Below, piece after piece: positions 154-12,303 of a DNA stretch of 64,000 nt. Each line of letters begins with the position of its first letter. Position 1 is the first letter of the stretch. The stretch comes from Magallana gigas (Eukaryota). The position numbers were made by a program, and so were the translations under genes. Location: NCBI RefSeq assembly GCF_963853765.1, contig NC_088855.1:35650001-35714000 (forward strand). The letters run 5' to 3'. A model generated the notes under the pieces. It saw only the letters and a list, made by a program, of their open reading frames with translations. It had not been told where the DNA came from and did not search any database.

Positions 154-2910
154 CATCTATATCTCCACAAAGGAGGTCTATGCTAGCCTCCATTGAGGCG
201 TGGTCATAACCAGTCAATAACATGTATTCATTGGCTCCTTCACAACTGTCAATTACGTTTCTCATGCATGAAAATAGTGTGTTCCTTACTCTGAAAAAAG
301 ATAATCATAAGTTACCTTGATTACGGATTTGACTGTCATTCAGTTCTTTTATAAATTCGGAAATTATCTTTTCAATATTGTGATTTTTATACAATTCAAG
401 TATTTTCGACTTTTTGTCTAACAAATTTTAAATATAACTGGTGTTTTTAAGTAGAAATTGGCACCGATTAGAATGCTTCCAATTNNNNNNNNNNNNNNNN
501 NNNNNNNNNNNNNNNNNNNNNNNNNNNNNNNNNNNNNNNNNNNNNNNNNNNNNNNNNNNNNNNNNNNNNNNNNNNNNNNNNNNNNNNNNNNNNNNNNNNN
601 NNNNNNNNNNNNNTTAACACCATCTTGACAAATAGATGCTACTCACCCACAAAATCTGGACGCTGCCTCTTTGTCTTTTCCAATAATGGCGCCTTTTATT
701 TCGGTTTCATTGGAGCCAAACATACTTGGACTAAGTCCAGCTTTGGTATAACATTGCTGCATGTTTGCGTCAAGCATGCGCATACAAGAGTTGGCTTGTG
801 GCAGCACACCTATAAAATACAGTAAATAAATTACAAAAATCAAACTTGACTACTTTTTAATTCTTAGACATATATACATGTAACTTCTAGTATTTATACT
901 TATACATATATCTGTATACTTTTATATTTAATTGTTCTTATCAGTTTTTGCACTTACGACCATTTAAACTACGGTATTTTCTGAGGATCAAAATAGAAAT
1001 TACCTGCACCACAAGCATTTTGCAAAGCCGTCAGTCTCCTGACTACTTGGTTCTCGGCAAAATTGAACTCTGCACTGTCTGTGCAAGGAGGCTTTCCGCG
1101 CATGTTCAGTGTGGGTGGAACGACGCATTGTATAATCTGTGCCCTTATTCTGAAAGGTAAAAATCATATTGTATATAGGAAAATTCTTTCACCAGCCGAG
1201 TTATTTTGAAAAAGGAAAAAGGTAAAATAAGTAAAACGTAGAAAGATGACATATCAACTAAATATGTGCAATCTATGACGACTTAATTTTTCATGTATTA
1301 CATCTACATGTTCATCTGTCATAAATTTTTTACGGCGTGTTGACCCATGGTCAGCGACGGGGGCTGATTGATGACATCAATTGAGTCAAGAGAGACTGAC
1401 TGTGGTCAGAAGCTTAGTATACATGTATATGTCAATACATGTATCTACCTATAGTGAATAAAATTTCGATATCGCGCAATTGCAATAATCTTGTTACAAA
1501 ATCATATACAAAGGAAAGAAAAAAGTCAAAATTTTAAGTGAATATGTATTCTAAAATGAAAAATTAAATGTTTGTCTTGCATTTTTAAAATTTAACAAAC
1601 TTCAAAGAAGCTTTTTAAACACCTTTTTTTAAAATAAGGTGGAGAAATTTACCTTAGAATAATATGTAGTTTCTCAAATCAACAGAAAACAAATTGATCA
1701 TGAAGAATAGCAATGATGCATAAGAAGCGTATAAGTCAAATAGGCGAAAAATACACAGTTTTTTTATTTTAGAAATATGATTTACTAAAAATGGTTTTCA
1801 GTAAATATGAGGAAAAACAGCATATCGGGCAAAGGACTATGTGCGGTATGGTCTAATATCTGCCCCCAATTTTAACCAATTTTTAAATAGTGTCGTATAA
1901 AAATAAAATCTTCATAAATCATTGTACAGAGGACGCCTATCACTTTAATCTTGATTTTAACCACCATTGCTCATTGGCTAGTTATCTATGACGTCAACTT
2001 TATGACCTTATTCCCGCAAATTTGCAAACGGAAGAAAATATTCTCATTTTTGCTTTAAATTTTGCATTTGGAAGTATAGAGCGCAGGTCTGCTCAAGTAA
2101 GATTTTAACATATGTTTCTCTTCAGATAATTATACACATTATACTAAAAAGTGGTACTTGAGCAAGCCTGCTAGGTTCACAAACCCAATACTTTGACTAC
2201 TAAGCTATCATGATTCTAAATCGATCGATACAATTTCACAAAACATTTATATCGTCATCTTGTGATGTAGTGTCTTAAAATAATCAATAACCCCTGATGT
2301 ACTGAGTTACCATAACAAATTCATAAACTAGTACTTCCAAAAGTAGATCAGAAACATGGATTTTCATTATGCGATATGATGATTAAATTTCGACCTTGAT
2401 TACAGCATTTAATGAAAATTCAAAAGACGCCTAGATAACACGCCAAAAATTTCGAATGTTTATGTCTTTATGTTACTGGAATGCTTACCCACAAAGGTTC
2501 TTCCTAAGGTCCATGATATTTGAATTGCTGGGTAATGGAGCAATAGTTCCATTGGTCAAAACAGCATCAATAGTCATCATTGGAAGTCCAGACCTCTGAA
2601 AGCAAGAGGCGCTGAGTTGTTGTACCTCTCGAACACACTGGCTAATGGGAGGTTGGGGAATAGGTTGTTGGCCATTGCAAAAATATGGACTACACAAAGC
2701 TATGAGAAATAATAATGAAAGTACAATGGAAGGGTGAAAAACGCTCCAAATTCGTTAAGAATGGTAATATTTGAAACGTGCTGATAATTTTTACAAATAC
2801 GATATTCTAAGTATAGCTTTCACCTGCATTAACAGTTTCTAAACAAAATTACTATATATCGTCGTACCTGTCATTAAAAGAAGTAGCCACATGGTGTCTC
2901 CTTGCCTCAT
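154..2910 (-). CDS. Gene A: secreted Cys-rich modular protein, paralog of gene B; 3' end runs off the left edge of the window
   Basis: Exons 2868-2910 (ATG at 2910 or 2892), 2489-2699, 1004-1149, 647-809 and 154-290 are all GT-AG and join in frame. The N-terminus MWLLLLMTALCSPYFCNG-QQP looks like a signal peptide. Modules show C-x10-C...C-x8-C spacing. KGAIIG and TGYDHASMEASIDLLC align with gene B KGAILG and TGFDLVSMERAVSILC. Confidence 0.85.
485..613. other. Assembly gap (129 N)
   Basis: Run of N inside a gene A intron. Confidence 1.
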
Positions 2911-4644
2911 ACCACTAATCCGACCAAAAACTGAAATGAACAAATGTGAAGAGTGTGCAGTCTTTAAGTAATTGAATTGATGATTAATACATGTGAATTA
3001 TTATATCGTAGAAATATTTAGCAGCAAGATGACCCAGCGTGCATTCCAACGATTCGTCATGGTGTCGCTCTCCATAGCCATGCATCACCGAATTCCGACA
3101 CCTCTGACTAGCTTTTACACTGCTTGTCACTGGGTAGACTTCATGTTTACTTTTAGTTGAATTGTTAATCTTGAATTAAAAGGATTTGTTAAATATGGCA
3201 GCAAATAAAGAAACGTGACTTAATTATAATCCCCCCCCCCTTTTTTTTTTTTTTTTTACATATCTGCATTCTATATATATATTTAAGTAAAGAGTGTTGA
3301 TATTTGCTGTAAAAGTCATCTCTTGCGTTATGGATATACCCGCAAGGCTTTAATAATGACTTATGTTTATAAGATTTTATGTACCCTGGGGACGTAATCA
3401 TTCTAATTTGTTTGCACTCATAACACTATAAAAGACACTTTTTGTTTGCTGCTTTTAAAGAACATTAGCAAATAGGAATCGTGTAAATGTCTGTTGAAAC
3501 AACAGAAAGATACATTTTCAAAATTTAATGAAATCATGAACAAATCGAATCTTCTACTAAAGTCGGTTAGAATATTTTAACAAACACGTAAAAAGAATTT
3601 CAATAAATCTAAAATCTGATGCTCTATATTATTTCCCTAAGCGTTCAACTGGGGTGCTAGGAAACTATATATGTAATGTAAAGTTGATCATCACTTCAAG
3701 CTTTTCTTTAAACCATGATTAAAATAGGACAAAAAATGGATCACAGACGTTGCTATGGATTAAGAGGCGTTGTAGTTCTAAAAAAGGGACTTATAGAAAG
3801 TGGTACCCAACACAAACTAGAATCAGTATGTGTTAAAAAAAATTGATACTCTAAATACACATCGAAAATAATGAATAATGCAGGCGTTTTACCCGATAAG
3901 GTCGTCCATATATTTTGGTTTTGCTACTCTCCTTTTGCTTCAAAATGACATATCATATACATTTCATGTTTTGTATCGAAATTGATTATGTAGAAACAAA
4001 GTAAGTATTAGTAGAAATCTGTTATCAGGTTTTTGTTATACCGTATTCGCATACTGTATTACATTACCTTTTTAAGAAGTCAAAATATCTACAATAACAA
4101 AGGAAACGCGCATGAATATTTAAATAGTCCACATTTATTTGTTTGTTTAGGTTCTTTTTCATTCATATCATTAGCGCTACTAAGATGTAGATATTCTTGC
4201 TATTATAATTCATCTGTCATTTAAAAAGATGTGCGTTATAAAAAAAATTGTTGATGTCCATTCTACTTTTTCATGTTTTTGCTCGTAGCTCACATTTTCA
4301 GGACTAATTTTTTCTTTGATGAAATGCATTCATATCAAATAGGGCACTGATGTGACTTCTTTGAAGTTCTTTCTCATATTCTTAGTAATCCCCATGAAGT
4401 ATATTTAATGAAACAATTTAATAATTTAGCTTACTGGTATATTGCTTCTAGCATCTTCTGGGATCAGATATTGTAGATTCCAAGAAACGAAAACAAGCCT
4501 TAGTTGTTCTGCATTTTCCATTTCGATTACCTTTTTAGCGGGAAAAAAATTGGAAACATGGAAATTGGAAATTATCTCTTTCAAATTAGAGCTAACTTTT
4601 TAAGATAAAAACTGATGTGTTCCCAAAATGTCTTGTTAAATCAA

Positions 4645-4756
4645 AGGCATCTGACGTTAAAAATATTTCTTTTTAAAGTAAAATAATTCCCTGCATATTT
4701 ATGGCACGAGAATTATTTCATTAATAAAAATAAATATTTTTTAACGTCAGATGCCT
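4645..4756. mobile_element. Short MITE-like element with ~24-bp terminal inverted repeats
   Basis: AGGCATCTGACGTTAAAAATATTT at 4645 and its near-perfect reverse complement ending at 4756. Confidence 0.6.
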
Positions 4757-5709
4757 GTGTGTGAAATGTAAAAAATATAACATTGTCTAGTAAATCACGT
4801 GTGTGGAATCAGTTTAAAACGTGCAAGTATATCACAACATGTTTATCGACCAAACATTATTTGTACAGCTTACTTCTTAATAGGAAAAGGGGGAGGGAAT
4901 ATATAAATAGATAATAGTTGTTTTGAGAGCTGTATTAGAAATAGATGTTTAATTATGAGTTACAGATTTACTTCTCAAAATTTCTTGTATTTATTCTCTG
5001 CACGAGAAAACGATAAACCATCTCGATAATTTATCAGCCTTCTAAATAATTTTGACAAAGGGGAGTAACTCTCACTAACACAGAAAAACTATAATTAACA
5101 GTAAGACTTTACATGATCTTTTTCTGGATCAAATTCTGTCCAAATACTAAATGCATGAAGATTTTTGCAGCTGCCATTCAGATAAAAATAAATAGATATA
5201 AAATAAATGTTTTTGATTTACTGTATTTATTCTACCTTACTCCAATTTAGAATACATGTTATGTATGTGTGAAAACTTTTGTAAATAAACTGTTGATAAA
5301 TAATACCGGTTGAGTTCTTCGTCGGTTTTTTCTACTTTCTCTTATTCTTATTCTGTTTTTTTTATTGAAGTGTTGCATAGAAATCAATTAAACATTCATA
5401 CCCAAGAAATGCAGATTTCATCACAATTAACGTAACACAAACTCAAACCAAATTCAAAGCAATGTGATTGATTTTGCAGACTACTATATATACATGTAGC
5501 TCAATCTTACCCCTACTCTCCCAAAGATTATGATGTAAAATACAATTTGTTAAACAAAAAAAAATTTCGTTGCTTGTTGGTTGTTTTTTGTTTTGTTTTT
5601 TCTTGCTTTTTTTTTTTGGTGAATAGAAATTTAATCGAAACTAGTACAGTCTATTGAAATAATCAAAAGTCCAATATAAAATAATTCTCATCTATTCACT
5701 TCACTTTAA

Positions 5710-6175
5710 AGGGGCATGGTCACGATTTTGATCAATTTTCCATTTTTCTGTTTTTATCATTTACGATGCTTTAGGAATACATTTCTAATGATCAAGTGAA
5801 ATTTGAGAGTCAGTCGTAGAAATATAAGAAAGATACAGGGATCACAATTCTGTCATGTTTTTGTTTACATAAGTTCAATATACCAGTAAAAAAGTTTTTT
5901 CAAGCTGATTTGTATATCTTCATTTTAAACATAAATAAACAATTTCAAACGTTTTACACATTCATATTTTTGTCTAAACTGGAATTTTTACTTTAACATT
6001 AAAAATGTAAACAAAAGCTTTGTTTACATATCGAAGAATTGTAAGCTCTGTAACTGGCTAATAATTCAATGAATGACACTCAAATTATTGTTGCCTATTA
6101 AAAATGCCTCACTGAAGCATTGTAAACATTAAAATCAGAAAAATAATTTTTGACAGAAATCGTGACCATGCCCCT
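5710..6175. mobile_element. Non-autonomous TIR DNA transposon, Kolobok-like (TTAA target)
   Basis: 19-bp TIRs AGGGGCATGGTCACGATTT / AAATCGTGACCATGCCCCT, flanked by TTAA (5706-5709) and CTAA. Purine-purine ends with a TTAA target fit Kolobok. No ORF. Confidence 0.75.
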
Positions 6176-7894
6176 CTAAAATGTCCTTTTAGTGTGCCAA
6201 ATGTAAAACAATATGTATTCTTTTTTCATTAAAAAAATTGTACATTGTAATTGTACATTCAGATTAATAAAAGAAAACAAAACCTGAATGAAATAAAACA
6301 AAAATGAAATACAAAACAATAAACATACCCACAAACAAGATTAGATGCATATTTCATTGCAAAAATAATTATATGTATTTTATTTAATTAAGATTCTGAA
6401 GCGAAATAATAAATATATGGAAAAAAAGATAGCATGAGATCTACTTCCAACAGTATTTGTGAATTATAGAGGGTGTTTATGTTCATTCCTTTGACAAACA
6501 CCGGGCGACTGATAGACGTGTCTCCCCGTGTATTACGATCTACCCAGCCCTACCTGCCCCGTCCTGACAGGTATGATGAATGAGTTACTTCCCTGTGACA
6601 TCATAGTTTACATAATTACATCCCGATCGTCACAGATACGACACGCCGTAATCCAATCAAATCACTCGCAAGAGCGTCTTACCTCGTTATCCAATCAAAT
6701 TCTGCGTAAGGATGATCTGGTTCATTCATCTTTTCTCTATCATAAGCGGGTACTGACGACCAATCATATACTTCTATTTCATGTTCATTAATTCGTTTAT
6801 TATATCTATATCATATATGTAATGCTGAAATCAGCCCAAAGGATACTATTTTACCAAATGTTGATTTAATCACTTTATCTTATATAGGACGGGTGGGTAA
6901 CTTAATCTAAAACAGGAACCTCTTCAAAATTGCCTATTCTAGCGTTTCGTAAGGATACATAAAAAAAACAGATCTAAAAACTACTATATTTCAACTAATT
7001 TGGGTAATTGTTTGCTTAGAGGGATGAGTTTAATATTTTTTTCGCGAGACCGCAAGTCTAAACTATTCACTCGAATTCGGAGCCCCTGAGACCCCCCCCC
7101 CCCCCATCCCAAAATCTCCCATGTTTTGAAGCAGGATATTCTGCAAAATGATGTCATCCACAAAAAAATGTCGGACATTTTTCCGATATGAACTTTTTGG
7201 ATTCTCACAGCGCATGTACTTGGCTTTTGTATTTGTTTCTTTTGTTTGTTTGTTATTTTAAAACACGTTTGCTTCTTGTGATTTATTTGCTCTATGGATA
7301 AGCTATTCAGTCTTTATTTATTTATACAGTTTGAGAAATGATAAGGAACATTATTTTTATAAATCATATTTTTATTAAAAATCAACAGGATCAGAATGAG
7401 CGCTCATTATGATCGGAAAACATATACATAAATTATTTCTTGCAAGAACACGCACACACATAAATACAAAACACACATAATACAAAAAGTGGATTCGTGG
7501 AATCATCACAGCATACAACGCACCCTTGGTCACCGAGCGGATGTCGACCGCAGTATAATTGCGTCATTTGTAGCTTTATACAGGATTTGCTTTATCACAT
7601 TTTCTTTTTCTTCTTTTTTTTTCTATAAGAATTTTTGAGACATTATTCCTCCCACAGATTTCCTCGGTCTGTATGACGTCATCAGATTATCTATATCTCA
7701 TTAAAGATTCCTCTAAAATAGCCTACTAGTATTCATATTCTAAAAGCTTTTTTCAGTTTTTTCAACCTTAATGCCATATTCAATATAAGCCAAAGTTAAT
7801 TGACTAAATCAGAAACACGAAAGGTTTCTTCATGACAGAATTTGGTATTTCGGTAATGGCATGTGATTTAGAGTAAATATCACTACAGTTTAAT

Positions 7895-10800
7895 CTATAA
7901 GAATACAAGAAGAGATAGACCTATGGTGACTAGTGTAGCTGAGATGTTAAATAGTCCACCAGCACTATTATTGCCTTCCTGTCCGCCTTGTACATTGGGT
8001 TTGTTATTGGTGATCGTATTCTGTGGTGAACCGCCGCTATTACGCACTCGGTTTGAGCGTGCGTAGTTGTTCACATTGCAGATCCGGTTGAAGTCGGCCC
8101 GCTTCAGCCCCTGACACCTGTCTTGGATAAGGTTACACTCAAACTCGGTCTTCAGGCCCACTGAGGCTGCGTCACAGGAACTCTTGACAGCCTTCAGGTC
8201 ACACTGAAGTTGTTCCAATCGGACGCTGCAAAAAAGATCAATGATCAATAAATAATCAGTAAATAGCTCCAGAGGTGTTCTTTTTTCGGAATATTATTAT
8301 TTTTAGTTGGGTTTCTTTTGCAGAATATAATGTGTGTCTTACCTGCAGAACTGTGTGTAGTAGGAAGACGATGTCTGACTGTTGGGGGTTAGATTTGTTA
8401 AATCTCCCATCTTCATCTCGGAATTTTTCTGACATTGGTTGATCTGTGATGTTGCACCACTTGCACAAGTAGAGAGTTTCTCATATCCTAAAATACAAAA
8501 CAATAAAAATATATTATAATGTTGTTTTTTTTCAAATCATTTCGATCTTCTGTTAATAAGTGTATCTTTTCTTATCGATCACATGTATAATCAAAAGATC
8601 TTACCATCCATGTTTTGGCAGAGGAGATCCAAAGCATCTTCCAGAAGGTCCTGTTGGTGTCCCCAGTACGCTAAGAGTTCGGAGGCTCCGGCACACCTGT
8701 CCAAGGTATCGCGCAGACATTTGAAAACGGATTGCCTATTCCTAAAATGACAAAAAGAACAATATTGTATATTGTAATCTCGGTAGTCAATGTTTTTTTT
8801 TCAAGGACTCAACTGAATCGTTAGTTGAAAAGATTTCTAAGATACTTACTGGCAAAAGTTTTGAGCTTGAGATCGGCTGCCTATCATGTTGCTACGGTCA
8901 TGTGTAACGTTGACGATGAAGGTCTCCGGATCGATGTTGTATGGGGCCAAACAGTTTCCAATGTTTACCTTCACATCGTCGACGCATGTATGTGGCTTTA
9001 CTCGAGCTGTAAAAAAAGTCGAAAAGTTTAACACCGTGTCTAGCATTATTTACTAAGCCTAGAATATAAATCATTGAGGTAATTCTGTGAAATAACAGTC
9101 AAAATACTCACAATCAGCTGGACAGACTTTGGAGATTTCGTCCTCGTTTACGTCGTGGCATCTGACAGGAAGCAAGTGGCACTCAAATTTGGTCTTAAGG
9201 GCAATAGCTCTGGGGTCGCAGGTTGGCCAGGCTTGGGAGTCACAGGTCACGTGATCAACACGGATTCTGCAATTTAAGAAATATAACACATTACACTCAA
9301 TGATAAGTCATTTAATGGTTCTTTATTAAGAATTTGTCTATTTTGAAATCAAAAAAGGTAAATATTGATCAAGTCACTTACTTGCAGAACTCGTTCAAAA
9401 ATCCATCTAAACTGATTCCTTTGGCCATCTGGTTTGCGGACATTTGAGTAATGTCGCGTCCCATGTTAGCGATACAGACTCGAGCTTTGTCACTGGGCTT
9501 AGCAAAACAATCGATTCCGGCGAGGTACTCTGGAATATCGTCACAAAGAATGCTCACAGCCCGTTCCATGGACACCAGATCAAATCCTGTCATTGCCATT
9601 GTCTGCTCGGCACCTGGACATTGGTGCATAACCTTCTTCATGCATGTGTAAAGTTCGCTCTTTTTGCTGGAAAAAGTTAAAAAGAATAAAGCTTTAATGG
9701 CATGTTTAGTAGAATGTCATGCTGTAATAATTTTTTAACATGTATTGTGTTGAAATTTAATTCTTTCATTCTTTTTTGCTATTAAAAAAAGTTATACCTG
9801 CAATATTTGTCAGCCATAGCTTTGTTGGTTCCAAGAATGGCTCCTTTGTGAGCGGTGATATTGGAAAAATATACAGCTGGGTCAAGACCGACCTGACCGA
9901 AGCATTTAGTGAACTGTTGTTGGAGGGTGAGCATACAGGCTCCGGGGACGGTGGTGTCGTGGCAGTAAGCCCCGACCGTGATGATAACGTTGGCGAAGGT
10001 TCCCTCCGAGATGAGCAGGTCTTTTCCTTTACATTGGTTCTTGATTACCACATTTTTACCACATTCTTCAAAACTATGGAAGTTGCTGTAATTTAAAAAA
10101 AGAAAAATGTCAAAATAAACATTGAATTGAAACTTTTCATTTGTGTTAAACGTTACTTAACTGGAATTTATGTAAAGAATTAAAATGGATTAATGCACTT
10201 ACTCGCAAATTGTTTTGTTAAGTTTCTGGATGTCCTGTCCTTCTGGGACCTGGCCTCGGGTCAGCAGAATCATGATGTCATTCAAAGGAGCGCCCATGGT
10301 GTCAATGGAACACTGGTTCAACTCTTCCTCGAACTTCTGGAGACAAGCACTGGGAGCCCTACCCGGACCGACAAGAGGCTGGCCCGTGCATACAGCCTGG
10401 TATGACGCCATCATGTTCTGGAGCGTCTGGCCGACCATGAATTGTTCCTGTTTTGTACATTCGTTGGCCAGTGATTGTAAACCACCTGATGCACAACCAA
10501 CGATGACCTGTTGTGTTGGTTTGCTGAAATACGATACAGATCTCAATTTTAATTTCTTATTCTTTTATAAATCGAAAAAAGCGACAACGATTGATTACGC
10601 TGTATTGTCTTTGAATTCTAGGTATCATTTGATGAAAACATTTGAAGCACTTACTTGCAGGTGCTGTCTCTAAGTTGTGGAAATGTCATCCCAGTTCCTT
10701 CGGTCTGGTTGGCCAACAGTTTGAAGTAGTTGTCATGATTGATTTTCTGCTGAGTCATGCAGGATTTGAAATTGTCGTCGAACCTTTTCAAACAAGGTGG

Positions 10801-12303
10801 CATTTCAGCTGTAGAAAAAATTACATTCATCAGTTGTGAAAGTAAAAATAGGTCTTATATTAATTGAAACAATTCCTTAGAACATATTATAATTGATCTT
10901 TATTCAATTCCAAAAGATTAGCTTACGTGTAACACCACACATGACGGCGATGGCTCTTCCGGTGGACTGAATGGTGGAGTCCATCATCATATTCTCGCGA
11001 TCACTGCACTGTACCTGGATGCTCTGGATGATGGGTTTCACGCATGCGTCAACCTTTTCTCGGTTTCTGTCAGAAAAAAAAATTGCACTGTTCAAATGTT
11101 GGTCAATTATACATGATCATCAAGAAATAAAATTCAATGATATAAAACTCGTTCCAAAATTTATTGAACATACCCGCAGACGACCGGCATCAGCTGTTGT
11201 CTGGATGTTCCTTGTGGCAGTGGTCCACTGGAACCGTTGGTAACCAGCGAGAAGATGACCTCCAGTTCAAAGTTTCCATTATCTTTGAAACACTTCCTGA
11301 AATTCTGGTCAAACATCTGTAGACATGGCGAGTTGAACTGGGATCCCTGTCCCTGTCCCTGTCCCTGTCCAGGCTGACCTTGTTGACCCTGGGCAGCAGC
11401 GCCACCTATCGTTATTCCTGTAAAACATTTAAAAAATGAATTTCATATGTTCTTTACGATGATCGAGTAAAATTCTTAGATTAATTCCAAATGTTTTTAC
11501 CCAAATTATATAATATAATTTTGAGTATATAGTAACTATGGCCATCTGAATTATGAATATTGAGAAAACTTGAATTGTTTAACTAATTCTCGGGTTGTTT
11601 TTTTGTGTGTGTTTTTTTAACATTTAGTATTTTATTTTGTCATAGTCATGATTGTACTTTGCTGAATATCTTAAGTAGATAGTTAACATAAGGCTAACAT
11701 CGGTGCATAAGATAGATTTATTATGGTCAGATCATCAATACGCGCTCGCTGGTGGGTGACAACTATGATTTGTCCGAAATAAAATGGACATAAAGCGCGC
11801 ATTGTTTGGCCATGCCTATGTTAACGGTGATTATTGCGATCATTAAGGACTCTCTTTCTCGTATCTAATACGGAAAAGGATAGCTTAATATGTTGATATT
11901 GTTGTAAAGATCTTCAGTAAAAGTAATTTGTTTCCAAGCACCCAAATATTTACTTGAAGTATTCTATACTTTTCTAGTTATATAAAATATATTGACATTA
12001 ATGAACACGGTTATATTTAAAATTTGATTTTACATTTTACTTCCCTTAATATTTTTCAGCTTTATTTTACTTTTCTATATCTTATTTTGATTTTTTTTTC
12101 TCTCTTTAAAAGAGACTGCTTTTCGATTCAAAAGAAATCGAGAATCGGTCACTTGCGGACATTTTCCAAATATTTAAGACATTTGAGGTTTAATCAAAAA
12201 TGAATTATTTTCAAAACTAAAGCTAATTTTTACATCAACCTGATACGTTTTTTTTGCATCAGAAATCACTATACTTACCTAAAAGTATGATAAATTTCCA
12301 CAT
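7895..12303 (-). CDS. Gene B: 793-aa secreted, probably GPI-anchored protein with seven Cys-rich helical modules (DUF19/CPG4-like at best; no confident family)
   Basis: Exons 12279-12303, 11174-11417, 10927-11066, 10655-10808, 10203-10523, 9798-10085, 9382-9666, 9112-9266, 8850-9006, 8605-8741, 8343-8487 and 7895-8225 total 2382 nt, all GT-AG and in frame. Signal peptide MWKFIILLGITIGGAAA. C-terminus has small residues (NNSAGG) then a hydrophobic tail (ISATLVTIGLSLLVFL*). AATAAA on the minus strand at 7371-7376. Confidence 0.9.
11345..11370 (-). repeat. Coding hexamer microsatellite (GGACAG)4 encoding a Gly-Gln tract
   Basis: Plus strand reads (CCCTGT)4; translates as GQGQGQGQ just after the signal peptide of gene B. 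Confidence 0.9.

What the first reader, a model, noticed from the sequence alone, without database searches (positions are those of the whole stretch)
154..12303. Tandem paralogs of an uncharacterised modular Cys-rich surface/secreted protein family
Seen: two co-oriented genes share a signal peptide starting MW and the same ~100-aa module. Gene A begins with modules matching gene B modules 3 and 4 (KGAIIG vs KGAILG; TGYDHASMEASIDLLC vs TGFDLVSMERAVSILC). It lacks B's first two modules and the GQ tract, so the paralogs differ in module number and are strongly diverged. I cannot name the family with confidence. Inference: duplicated, divergent, disulfide-rich, glycosylated, lipid-anchored repeat proteins resemble invertebrate recognition, gamete-surface, mucus or shell-matrix families. 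This is the best candidate for an undescribed system here.
Basis: partly seen in the sequence, partly recalled or inferred. Interest (0 to 1): 0.75.

Follow-up and report, generated by a model that had tools for sequence, protein, structure and literature searches.

The report
Two conserved GPI-anchored DUF19-like oyster genes
The region holds two real, expressed Pacific-oyster genes for cell-surface, cysteine-rich helical proteins that are an ancient, slowly evolving bivalve gene pair and belong to a known protein superfamily (DUF19/CPG4/DUF1397) whose function has never been studied.

Summary
Two co-oriented minus-strand genes share a signal peptide and ~100-aa Cys-rich modules.

- **Gene B** (12303-7895): 12 exons, 793 aa. 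It is identical to Magallana gigas XP_034335858.2 (LOC105340196). Spliced RNA contigs from three studies confirm all 11 introns.
- **Gene A** (2892-154, then about 1.06 kb beyond the left edge): 7 exons, 367 aa. It is LOC105340197 and is identical to an ORF on 24 intron-less contigs.
- **The N gap** lies inside intron 4 of gene A and costs no coding sequence.

- There are two module types: 6-Cys "a" and 8-Cys "b". B = a-a-a-(ab)-(ab) and A = a-(ab).
- The family can be named. Evidence: DUF1397 Pfam hits near or above threshold; fold matches to proteins named DUF19 or CPG4; UniRef's name "DUF19 domain-containing" for orthologues.
- It is not a fast-evolving, expanding recognition family. The genome has exactly two genes. 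Each has orthologues across bivalves, including the protobranch Solemya. dN/dS against Saccostrea is about 0.05 or less.

Signal peptide and GPI-type tail are conserved throughout. No solved structure and no functional paper was found. Most likely these are non-enzymatic, GPI-tethered binding or scaffold glycoproteins of an epithelial surface coat; this is inferred. Interest is modest.

The parts
12279..12303 (-). Gene B exon 1: ATG and start of the signal peptide (MWKFIILL)
   Evidence: Model. The 11417/12279 junction is seen in spliced contigs of X1, X3 and X7.
11174..11417 (-). Gene B exon 2: end of the signal peptide, G/Q-rich tract, first half of module M1 (type a)
10927..11066 (-). Gene B exon 3: second half of M1
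10655..10808 (-). Gene B exon 4: first half of M2
10203..10523 (-). Gene B exon 5: second half of M2 plus first half of M3
9798..10085 (-). Gene B exon 6: second half of M3 plus first half of M4 (contains KGAILG)
9382..9666 (-). Gene B exon 7: second half of M4 (TGFDLVSMERAVSILC) plus first half of M5
   Evidence: This exon was the query of the representative search.
9112..9266 (-). Gene B exon 8: second half of M5 (8-Cys type b, motif IRVDH..C..AW..C)
8850..9006 (-). Gene B exon 9: first half of M6
8605..8741 (-). Gene B exon 10: second half of M6
8343..8487 (-). Gene B exon 11: first half of M7
7895..8225 (-). Gene B exon 12: second half of M7 (type b), N/G/S-rich stalk, GPI-type signal (small residues NSAGG, then a hydrophobic tail that ends the protein), stop codon. 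The 3'UTR continues below 7895.
   Evidence: RNA contigs cover 7700-8225.
2868..2910 (-). Gene A exon 1: ATG at 2892 (MWLLLL). RefSeq uses the in-frame upstream ATG at 2910 (MRQGDTMW...).
2489..2699 (-). Gene A exon 2: end of the signal peptide, short Q/P tract, first half of module A1 (type a)
   Evidence: The protein is identical to mRNA-derived P0092.
1004..1149 (-). Gene A exon 3: second half of A1
647..809 (-). Gene A exon 4: first half of A2 (KGAIIG)
485..613 (.). Assembly gap (N), inside intron 4 of gene A. No coding sequence is affected.
   Evidence: GT at 646-645 and AG at 292-291 on the minus strand. Exons 4 and 5 are joined without an indel in P0046, P0084 and P0092.
154..290 (-). 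Gene A exon 5: second half of A2 (TGYDHASMEASIDLLC). Its donor lies at 153-152. The gene continues left of the window: exon 6 at G000:C3:35649784-35649931 and exon 7, with the GPI-type tail, at 35648942-35649212.

Best explanation
**What it is (shown).** The window comes from the Magallana (Crassostrea) gigas reference genome. It carries an ancient head-to-tail gene pair, LOC105340196 (B, 793 aa) followed by LOC105340197 (A, 367 aa).
- Both encode an N-terminal signal peptide, an array of all-helical disulfide-rich modules, and a C-terminal GPI-attachment-type signal.
- There are two module types. Type 'a' has 6 Cys (C-x10-C-x28..37-C-x8-C-x7..13-C-x22..24-C). Type 'b' has 8 Cys.
- An a+b pair is predicted to fold as one compact helical domain of about 210 aa. 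This domain is the unit that resembles the DUF19/CPG4/DUF1397 domains of nematodes and arthropods.
- B = a-a-a-(ab)-(ab) and A = a-(ab). A is collinear with B modules 3-5.

**How it most likely works (inferred).**
- After ER import, disulfide formation and N-glycosylation, the C-terminal peptide is exchanged for a GPI anchor. The helical array is then displayed on the outer leaflet of the plasma membrane.
- The protein has no catalytic motif. It would act as a non-enzymatic binding or scaffold component of the cell-surface coat or apical extracellular matrix.
- It could be released by GPI cleavage.
- B, with three extra modules, would be the longer-reaching form; A would be the compact paralogue.
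For: **Gene models and expression.**

**Source genome.** XP_034335858.2 is identical to B. XP_011444437.3 shares its C-terminal 300 residues and the start of A's signal peptide with A and adds 6 residues at the N terminus. Both lie on a contig of 61,039,741 nt, the same length as G000:C3.

**Module classes.** hhalign on 15 orthologues.

**Fold.**
- AF2 model of A: pLDDT 83.9, all-alpha.
- The a+b unit alone: pLDDT 90.8, pTM 0.86.

**Superfamily link.**
- Pfam DUF1397 is the only family that recurs with its own passing stretches. It appears in 7 of 14 B-type proteins at E 5e-8 to 0.013. One is above the gathering score, and gene B itself is 1 bit below it.
- Foldseek against AFDB clusters gives mollusc 'DUF19 domain-containing' proteins at E 3e-15 to 1e-8. 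It then gives proteins of about 225 aa from nematodes (DUF19, CPG4), insects, Lingula and oyster. These match residues 135-350, the a+b unit, with probability 0.93-1.0.
- Language-model features point to the same three families.
- UniRef names orthologues 'DUF19 domain-containing'.

**Surface tethering.** Signal peptides, and hydrophobic C-termini preceded by small residues, are conserved in 24 orthologues.

**Conservation.**
- B orthologues of about 750-815 aa occur in oysters, scallops, mussels, arks, clams and Solemya. The unionid orthologues are about 995 aa.
- A-type proteins occur in bivalves and gastropods.
- Against Saccostrea: about 85% amino-acid identity, dN 0.09-0.10, dS saturated.

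**Matrix context of relatives (literature).**
- DUF1397 proteins appear in mosquito and Hermetia peritrophic-matrix proteomes (PMC5865745, PMC8035744).
- Knock-down of the DUF19 gene exc-17 deforms excretory canals (bioRxiv 10.1101/359653).
Against: - No functional datum exists for these genes or any mollusc orthologue.
- The tissue of expression is unknown here, because run metadata were coded.
- The GPI anchor is predicted from sequence only.
- Membership of DUF19 or CPG4 rests on predicted-fold similarity with modest TM-scores (0.41-0.57 by hit) and weak E-values for the non-mollusc hits. Pfam DUF19 and CPG4 gave no hit at E<=1 in the 30 proteins scanned.
- The relatives themselves have no known biochemical function, so 'binding or scaffold' is a default inference.
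- I could not inspect model coordinates, so neither disulfide pairing nor any cavity was checked.
Confidence: 0.55

Rival explanations
1. One reading: a lineage-specific, rapidly diverging recognition, gamete-surface, mucus or shell-matrix family. Copy number and module number would vary between individuals and species.
For: - The architecture (signal peptide, Cys-rich repeats, glycosylation, GPI) is common among such families.
- The two paralogues are only about 31% identical.
- A few amino-acid polymorphisms occur among public oyster transcripts.
Against: - The genome holds exactly two genes, even with a profile search.
- The seven-module architecture and length are conserved across bivalve orders.
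- A and B each form one clade that includes Solemya.
- dN is about 0.09 while dS is saturated.
Confidence: 0.07
2. A GPI-anchored co-receptor that captures a secreted protein ligand and presents it to a transmembrane signalling receptor. The logic is that of GFR-alpha/GAS1 or RGM, which are GPI-anchored, helical and Cys-rich.
For: - The overall design is the same: tandem helical disulfide-rich domains on a GPI anchor.
- Strong conservation and single-copy status fit a developmental signalling role.
- Recurrent sub-threshold Pfam RGM_N matches occur, most of them in module M6 (E 7e-5 to 0.06).
Against: - No GDNF/GAS1 Pfam hit was found.
- The RGM_N matches are short (about 30 aa) and below cut-off, and no stretch passes on its own.
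- No GFR-alpha, GAS1 or RGM structure appears among the best 50 Foldseek or VIA-align matches listed from the PDB.
- No candidate ligand or receptor is known.
Confidence: 0.15
3. A carrier or sensor for lipids or other hydrophobic small molecules. The helical domain would hold a ligand, and the protein could be shed into haemolymph or mucus, like the soluble insect 27-kDa haemolymph DUF1397 proteins.
For: - The closest Pfam family, DUF1397, includes abundant soluble haemolymph proteins (PMC4224417).
- Disulfide-locked all-helical domains are a frequent scaffold for lipid binding. This is general knowledge, not tested here.
Against: - No cavity could be examined because no coordinates were available.
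- No fold match to saposins, odorant-binding proteins or other lipid binders was found.
- The function of the insect proteins is itself unknown.
Confidence: 0.1
4. A proteoglycan core protein, like C. elegans CPG-4. It would carry chondroitin-type chains on the G/Q- and S/G/N-rich linkers and contribute to a hydrated surface gel.
For: - Fold and feature similarity to proteins named CPG4 domain-containing.
- Low-complexity G/Q and N/S/G tracts lie at both ends of B.
Against: - No Pfam CPG4 hit was found.
- Ser-Gly sites are few and were not examined for flanking acidic residues.
- Glycosaminoglycan attachment cannot be predicted reliably from sequence.
Confidence: 0.08

Closest known systems
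Pfam DUF1397 (PF07165), e.g. the insect 27-kDa haemolymph glycoprotein (Galleria P83632)
   Same: - It is the only Pfam family that recurs with its own passing stretches. It is above the gathering score in the Pinctada orthologue of B (32.9 bits) and 1 bit below it in gene B (24.7 against 25.7).
- The profile (207 positions) spans two consecutive modules, matching the two-module domain.
- Both are secreted, Cys-rich and of unknown function.
   Different: - The insect proteins are single-domain, soluble and about 230 aa.
- The oyster proteins have 3 or 7 modules and a GPI-type tail.
- Sequence similarity is marginal.
Pfam DUF19 (PF01579, T20D4.11-like domain) of nematodes
   Same: - UniRef names several mollusc orthologues 'DUF19 domain-containing protein'.
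- The predicted fold of the a+b unit matches AFDB clusters with that name at probability 1.0.
- Both are secreted, Cys-rich and helical.
   Different: - The current Pfam DUF19 model gives no hit at E<=1 in 30 family members.
- Nematode members are 140-220 aa and form an expanded family of 51 genes in C. elegans (PMC3534327).
- Here there are only two genes, both multi-domain and GPI-tailed.
CPG4 domain (PF15481), C. elegans chondroitin proteoglycan 4
   Same: Weak fold matches (probability 0.93-0.98, E 0.2-0.5) and the best language-model feature matches (0.84) for the a+b unit.
   Different: - No Pfam hit.
- Chondroitin attachment is unknown.
- The architecture differs.
Vertebrate GPI-anchored helical Cys-rich co-receptors (GFR-alpha/GAS1, RGM)
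   Same: The design principle is shared: signal peptide, tandem disulfide-rich helical domains and a GPI anchor.
   Different: No significant sequence or fold relation was found. This is an analogy only.

Membership tests
DUF1397 (PF07165) | Pfam HMM score at or above the gathering score (25.7 bits) | tested here: inconclusive
   - Gene B protein (P0057, 1 aa different): 24.7 bits, E 1.7e-5, just below the cut-off.
- Pinctada orthologue P0002: 32.9 bits, above it.
- 7 of 14 B-type and 2 of 12 A-type proteins hit at E<=0.1.
-.
DUF1397 (PF07165) | Single secreted domain of about 200 aa as the whole mature protein | tested here: not met
   A has 3 modules and B has 7, plus a GPI-type tail.
DUF19 (PF01579) | Match to the Pfam DUF19 model | tested here: not met
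   No DUF19 hit at E<=1 in 30 proteins scanned. The six-frame search of the genome found nothing, and its control genomes (none of which rang) did not validate it, so that blank is uninformative.
DUF19 (PF01579) | Same fold as proteins annotated DUF19 | tested here: met
   Foldseek against AFDB clusters:
- V4BAL8, E 3e-15.
- A0A3S1BTB2, E 1e-8.
- A0A2C9KX39, E 4e-5.
- A0A6A5FYS7, probability 1.0 but E 0.08.

All are predicted models and their names are automatic.
CPG4 (PF15481) | Pfam match or fold match, and chondroitin attachment | tested here: inconclusive
   No Pfam hit. Fold matches have probability 0.93-0.98 but E 0.23-0.52. Feature score is 0.84. Glycosaminoglycan attachment is not testable here.
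GPI-anchored proteins | N-terminal signal peptide, plus a C-terminal hydrophobic stretch that ends the protein and is preceded by small residues (omega-site region) | tested here: met
   B ends ...NNSAGG-LFNIS-ATLVTIGLSLLVFL. A ends ...KNSAS-QLST-VLASVVTLLSMILIL. Mean Kyte-Doolittle value of the last 15 residues is 2.2-2.8. The same layout occurs in 24 orthologues.
GPI-anchored proteins | Release by PI-PLC, or a lipid anchor shown chemically | not testable with these tools
   This needs a wet-lab experiment.
GDNF-receptor/GAS1 or RGM families | Pfam GDNF (PF02351) or RGM_N/RGM_C match, or a fold match to solved structures | tested here: not met
   - No GDNF hit.
- RGM_N is sub-threshold only (E 7e-5 to 0.06, no stretch passing).
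- No such chain appears among the best 50 PDB matches listed by either aligner.
-.

The most novel reading that the evidence does not exclude
These genes would be the membrane-tethered, multi-domain branch of a protostome-wide helical Cys-rich domain superfamily (DUF19/CPG4/DUF1397). No solved structure turned up here for that superfamily and no biochemical function is known for it. They would act as a conserved bivalve cell-surface receptor or co-receptor for a specific ligand. Because they are single-copy and slowly evolving, they could be the tractable entry point that finally assigns a function to the large secreted nematode and insect families (51 DUF19 genes in C. elegans alone).
Probability: 0.12. 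Interest if true: 0.6.

Novelty: new variant of a known kind. Interest (0 to 1): 0.3.

Why it matters
- Some literature still describes DUF19 as nematode-specific and DUF1397 as insect-specific, and both as of unknown function. This locus shows a conserved mollusc branch with a different architecture: tandem domains on a GPI anchor. It has been kept as a two-gene pair since the bivalve ancestor.
- That gives comparative anchors for the superfamily: a two-module structural unit, invariant Cys and Trp/Tyr positions, and a confident model.
- It also flags two abundant oyster surface proteins that nobody has studied.
- It is not a new kind of system, and nothing here points to an unusual mechanism.

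Tried and rejected
- **Pfam on single exons:** nothing at E<=5, because the domains are split by introns.
- **MAFFT alignment of half-module exon fragments:** the first-half fragments were misaligned, and a three-row exon profile (A3) would have lost half its columns. I dropped both and searched with one exon instead.
- **Solved-structure relatives:** the sequence profile against the PDB gave nothing below E 0.4. Foldseek against the PDB gave a best E of 0.25 for the whole A model and 0.88 for the a+b unit. VIA-align wide gave a best Z of 8.1 over 72 residues, which is only helical hairpins. I therefore claim no solved-fold relative.
- **AFDB Swiss-Prot and ESM-Atlas fold searches:** no meaningful match.
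- **Six-frame genome searches with Pfam DUF1397 and DUF19:** no hit, and no control genome rang either, so these are uninformative.
- **Profile search of the 5.8-billion-protein set with the a+b alignment:** molluscs only. The word prefilter probably prevents it reaching other phyla.
- **P0029 and P0031 from the representative search:** bacterial multi-domain proteins, treated as chance hits.
- **Synteny:** Solemya and Ruditapes loci within ±10 kb did not contain the partner gene. Adjacency is directly shown only for Saccostrea. Elsewhere the two genes are only known to share a contig.
- **dN/dS:** dS is saturated, so only an upper bound of about 0.05 is meaningful. A first run mixed paralogous HSPs and was redone with restricted ranges.
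- **One literature search** was wasted on prefix matching of 'DUF19'.
- **K1PB63:** I could not establish whether this 'DUF19 domain-containing protein' from the oyster digestive-tissue norovirus pull-down list (PMC10058639) is one of these genes.
Full report
**1. What is in the sequence**

The window is AT-rich eukaryotic DNA with short GT-AG introns. It maps to G000:C3:35650001-35714000 of a 564-Mb assembly. Both genes of the finding are on the minus strand.

Gene B:
- I assembled it by hand. It has 12 exons, all GT-AG, from the ATG at 12303 to the stop at 7897-7895, giving 793 aa.
- Contigs from three independent studies (X1, X3 and X7, the last recorded as RNA-Seq) skip exactly the 11 predicted introns, with CT..AC ends on the plus strand.
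- The translation is identical to XP_034335858.2 of Magallana gigas. That protein lies on a contig of 61,039,741 nt, the same length as C3.
- It differs by one residue from XP_011444436.1, LOC105340196.

Gene A:
- It starts at 2892. An in-frame ATG at 2910 is the one RefSeq uses.
- Five exons lie in the window. After fetching the sequence to the left, I found two more exons. The total is 7 exons and 367 aa.
- This protein is identical to P0092, an ORF found uninterrupted on 24 Logan contigs of 1.56 kb or less. At least four samples are listed.
- The genomic gene spans about 3.95 kb, so these contigs are spliced mRNA.
- XP_011444437.3 (LOC105340197) shares its C-terminal 300 residues and the start of the signal peptide with gene A and adds six residues at the N terminus.

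**2. The assembly gap**

- N 485-613 lies between exon 4 (809-647, donor GT at 646-645) and exon 5 (290-154, acceptor AG at 292-291).
- It is therefore inside intron 4 of gene A.
- The mRNA-derived and RefSeq proteins join the two exons with no insertion or deletion.
- No coding sequence depends on the gap. I did not try to fill it.

**3. Modules**

Cys spacing gives these patterns:
- A 6-Cys pattern: C-x10-C-x28..37-C-x8-C-x7..13-C-x22..24-C.
- An 8-Cys variant: ...C-x8-C-x7/8-C-x12-C-x6-C-x11..14-C.

B has seven modules and A has three. Most modules are split by an intron after the third Cys, with conserved phases. In B exons 5-7 the inter-module introns are missing.

Profile-profile comparison of module alignments cut from 15 B orthologues gave:

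| Pair | Probability | E-value |
|---|---|---|
| M1~M2~M3 | 97-98% | 1e-10 to 6e-14 |
| M1~M4 | 86% | |
| M4~M6 | 99.3% | 7e-21 |
| M5~M7 | 99.8% | 4e-28 |
| M5 or M7 against any 6-Cys module | below 2% | |

So there are two module types, and B = a-a-a-(ab)-(ab). A aligns collinearly to B modules 3-5, so A = a-(ab). 'One module repeated nine times' is not.

**4. Family size and age**

Copy number:
- Six-frame searches of the whole genome with two B exons, and with a 29-sequence profile of the a+b unit, find only exons of A and B.

Distribution:
- An exhaustive phmmer search of 1.84 billion representatives with B exon 7 found 45 proteins.
- All the named hits checked are molluscs, bivalves and gastropods. 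Two bacterial multi-domain proteins were also hit and were treated as chance.
- B orthologues of about 750-815 aa occur in oysters, scallops, mussels, arks, venerids and the protobranch Solemya. The unionid orthologues are about 995 aa.
- A-type three-module proteins of about 365 aa occur in bivalves and in Haliotis, Littorina, Lottia, Patella, Pomacea and Lymnaea.

Phylogeny:
- Bivalve A (SH-aLRT 98) and bivalve B (99) are each one clade.
- Together they are separated from all gastropod sequences (97).
- Both clades contain Solemya.
- The duplication therefore most simply dates to the bivalve stem. The root is not established.

Synteny and selection:
- In Saccostrea cucullata, B lies 4.7 kb upstream of A on the same strand, as it does here.
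- In Pinctada, Solemya and Ruditapes the two genes share a contig. Adjacency within 10 kb was not seen for Solemya or Ruditapes.
- Against Saccostrea, both genes are about 85% identical at protein level. dN is 0.09-0.10 and synonymous sites are saturated, so dN/dS is at most about 0.05.
- This is the profile of a constrained, single-copy gene pair, not an expanding recognition family.

**5. What family**

Sequence evidence:
- Full-length proteins give recurrent Pfam hits to DUF1397 (PF07165).
- Gene B's protein scores 24.7 bits (E 1.7e-5) against a cut-off of 25.7. The Pinctada orthologue scores 32.9 bits. Seven of 14 B-type proteins hit at E<=0.013.
- The matched profile region (positions about 32-187 of 207) always spans the second half of one module and the first half of the next. 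One DUF1397 domain therefore corresponds to two modules.
- DUF19 and CPG4 Pfam models give no hit.
- UniRef nevertheless names several orthologues 'DUF19 domain-containing protein'.

Structure evidence:
- The AF2 model of A, built with 32 aligned sequences, is all-helical (pLDDT 83.9).
- The a+b unit alone gives pLDDT 90.8 and pTM 0.86, which indicates one compact domain.
- Foldseek against AFDB clusters returns mollusc proteins named DUF19 first (E 3e-15 to 1e-8).
- It then returns proteins of about 225 aa from nematodes (DUF19, CPG4), insects, a brachiopod and oyster (K1PQZ1). These align to residues 135-350, the a+b unit. Probability is 0.93-1.0, but E-values are weak and TM by hit is 0.41-0.57.
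- Language-model feature searches point independently to CPG4, DUF19 and DUF1397 clusters at 0.76-0.84. These are leads only.
- No solved structure is related by sequence or fold.

I conclude that these genes belong to the DUF19/CPG4/DUF1397 superfamily. Direct membership of any single Pfam family is borderline (DUF1397) or not met (DUF19, CPG4).

**6. Topology**

- All 24 orthologues inspected have a hydrophobic N-terminal signal.
- All also have a hydrophobic C-terminus that ends the protein and is preceded by small residues (S, G, A, N). This is the GPI-attachment layout.
- B has 8 N-x-S/T sequons and A has 3.
- No transmembrane-plus-cytoplasmic tail and no catalytic motif was seen.

**7. 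Mechanism**

Shown: the proteins are secretory, disulfide-rich, helical and modular, carry a GPI-type signal, are expressed, and are under strong constraint.

Inferred: they are displayed on the outer leaflet as non-enzymatic binding or scaffold proteins of an epithelial surface coat or apical matrix, and may be shed.

The inference leans on what little is known of relatives:
- DUF1397 proteins occur in insect peritrophic-matrix proteomes, haemolymph and centipede venom (PMC5865745, PMC8035744, PMC4224417, PMC6878950).
- DUF19 is a large family of putative secreted proteins in C. elegans, and 14 of its 51 genes are induced by infection (PMC3534327).
- Knock-down of the DUF19 gene exc-17 deforms excretory canals (bioRxiv 10.1101/359653).

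Rivals that remain open are a co-receptor, a lipid carrier and a proteoglycan core.

**8. Novelty**

- No paper mentions LOC105340196 or LOC105340197, or the three bivalve B orthologue gene IDs searched.
- A 'DUF19 domain-containing protein' (K1PB63) appears once, in an oyster digestive-tissue pull-down list (PMC10058639). I could not link it to these genes.
- The superfamily is known, though only as DUFs. The mollusc multi-domain GPI-tethered architecture and its conservation are not described in the papers searched.
- I classify this as a new variant of a known kind, of modest interest.

**9. Earlier notes of this scan**

Notes s1-359020 and s1-359051 describe this same stretch and the same Cys pattern. 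They add no independent evidence.

Noticed in passing
window 5702-6183: A MITE-like element lies in the A-B intergenic region. It has 34-nt terminal inverted repeats (85% complementary, core GGGGCATGGTCACGATTT) enclosing a second 110-nt inverted repeat pair.
   Followed up: partly
window 4642-4759: A 33-nt inverted repeat with a 52-nt loop (82% complementary) in the intergenic region. It may be a small hairpin element.
   Followed up: no
L003 6638-8242, minus strand (G000:C3:35636638-35638242): The gene to the left of gene A is a long single-exon ORF of about 534 aa that looks like a rhodopsin-type GPCR. It has several hydrophobic segments and an NPIIY motif. It is unrelated to the finding.
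   Followed up: no
window 3231-3257, 7092-7107, 12827-12858: Long homopolymer junctions: C(10)T(17), C(16) and T(17)G(11). These are typical polymerase-slippage or assembly-prone sites in intergenic DNA.
   Followed up: no
window 20999-21565 (+): A 188-aa open stretch with coiled-coil-like composition, probably an exon of the neighbouring gene.
   Followed up: no
Gene B module M6 (P0057 residues ~572-615; window ~8605-8741): Sub-threshold Pfam RGM_N matches recur in B orthologues, most of them over M6 (E 7e-5 to 0.06, about 30 aa). They are probably Cys-pattern noise, but RGM is also a GPI-anchored helical protein.
   Followed up: partly
Cluster of P0046: Crassostrea virginica lists two A-type loci, LOC111134160 and LOC111137910, of about 375 aa. 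This is either a species-specific duplicate or an assembly haplotig.
   Followed up: no
AFDB cluster hit K1PQZ1: A 223-aa uncharacterised M. gigas protein matches the a+b unit at fold level (probability 1.0, TM by hit 0.49). Oysters therefore also have small, very distant members of the superfamily that the sequence searches of the genome did not detect.
   Followed up: no
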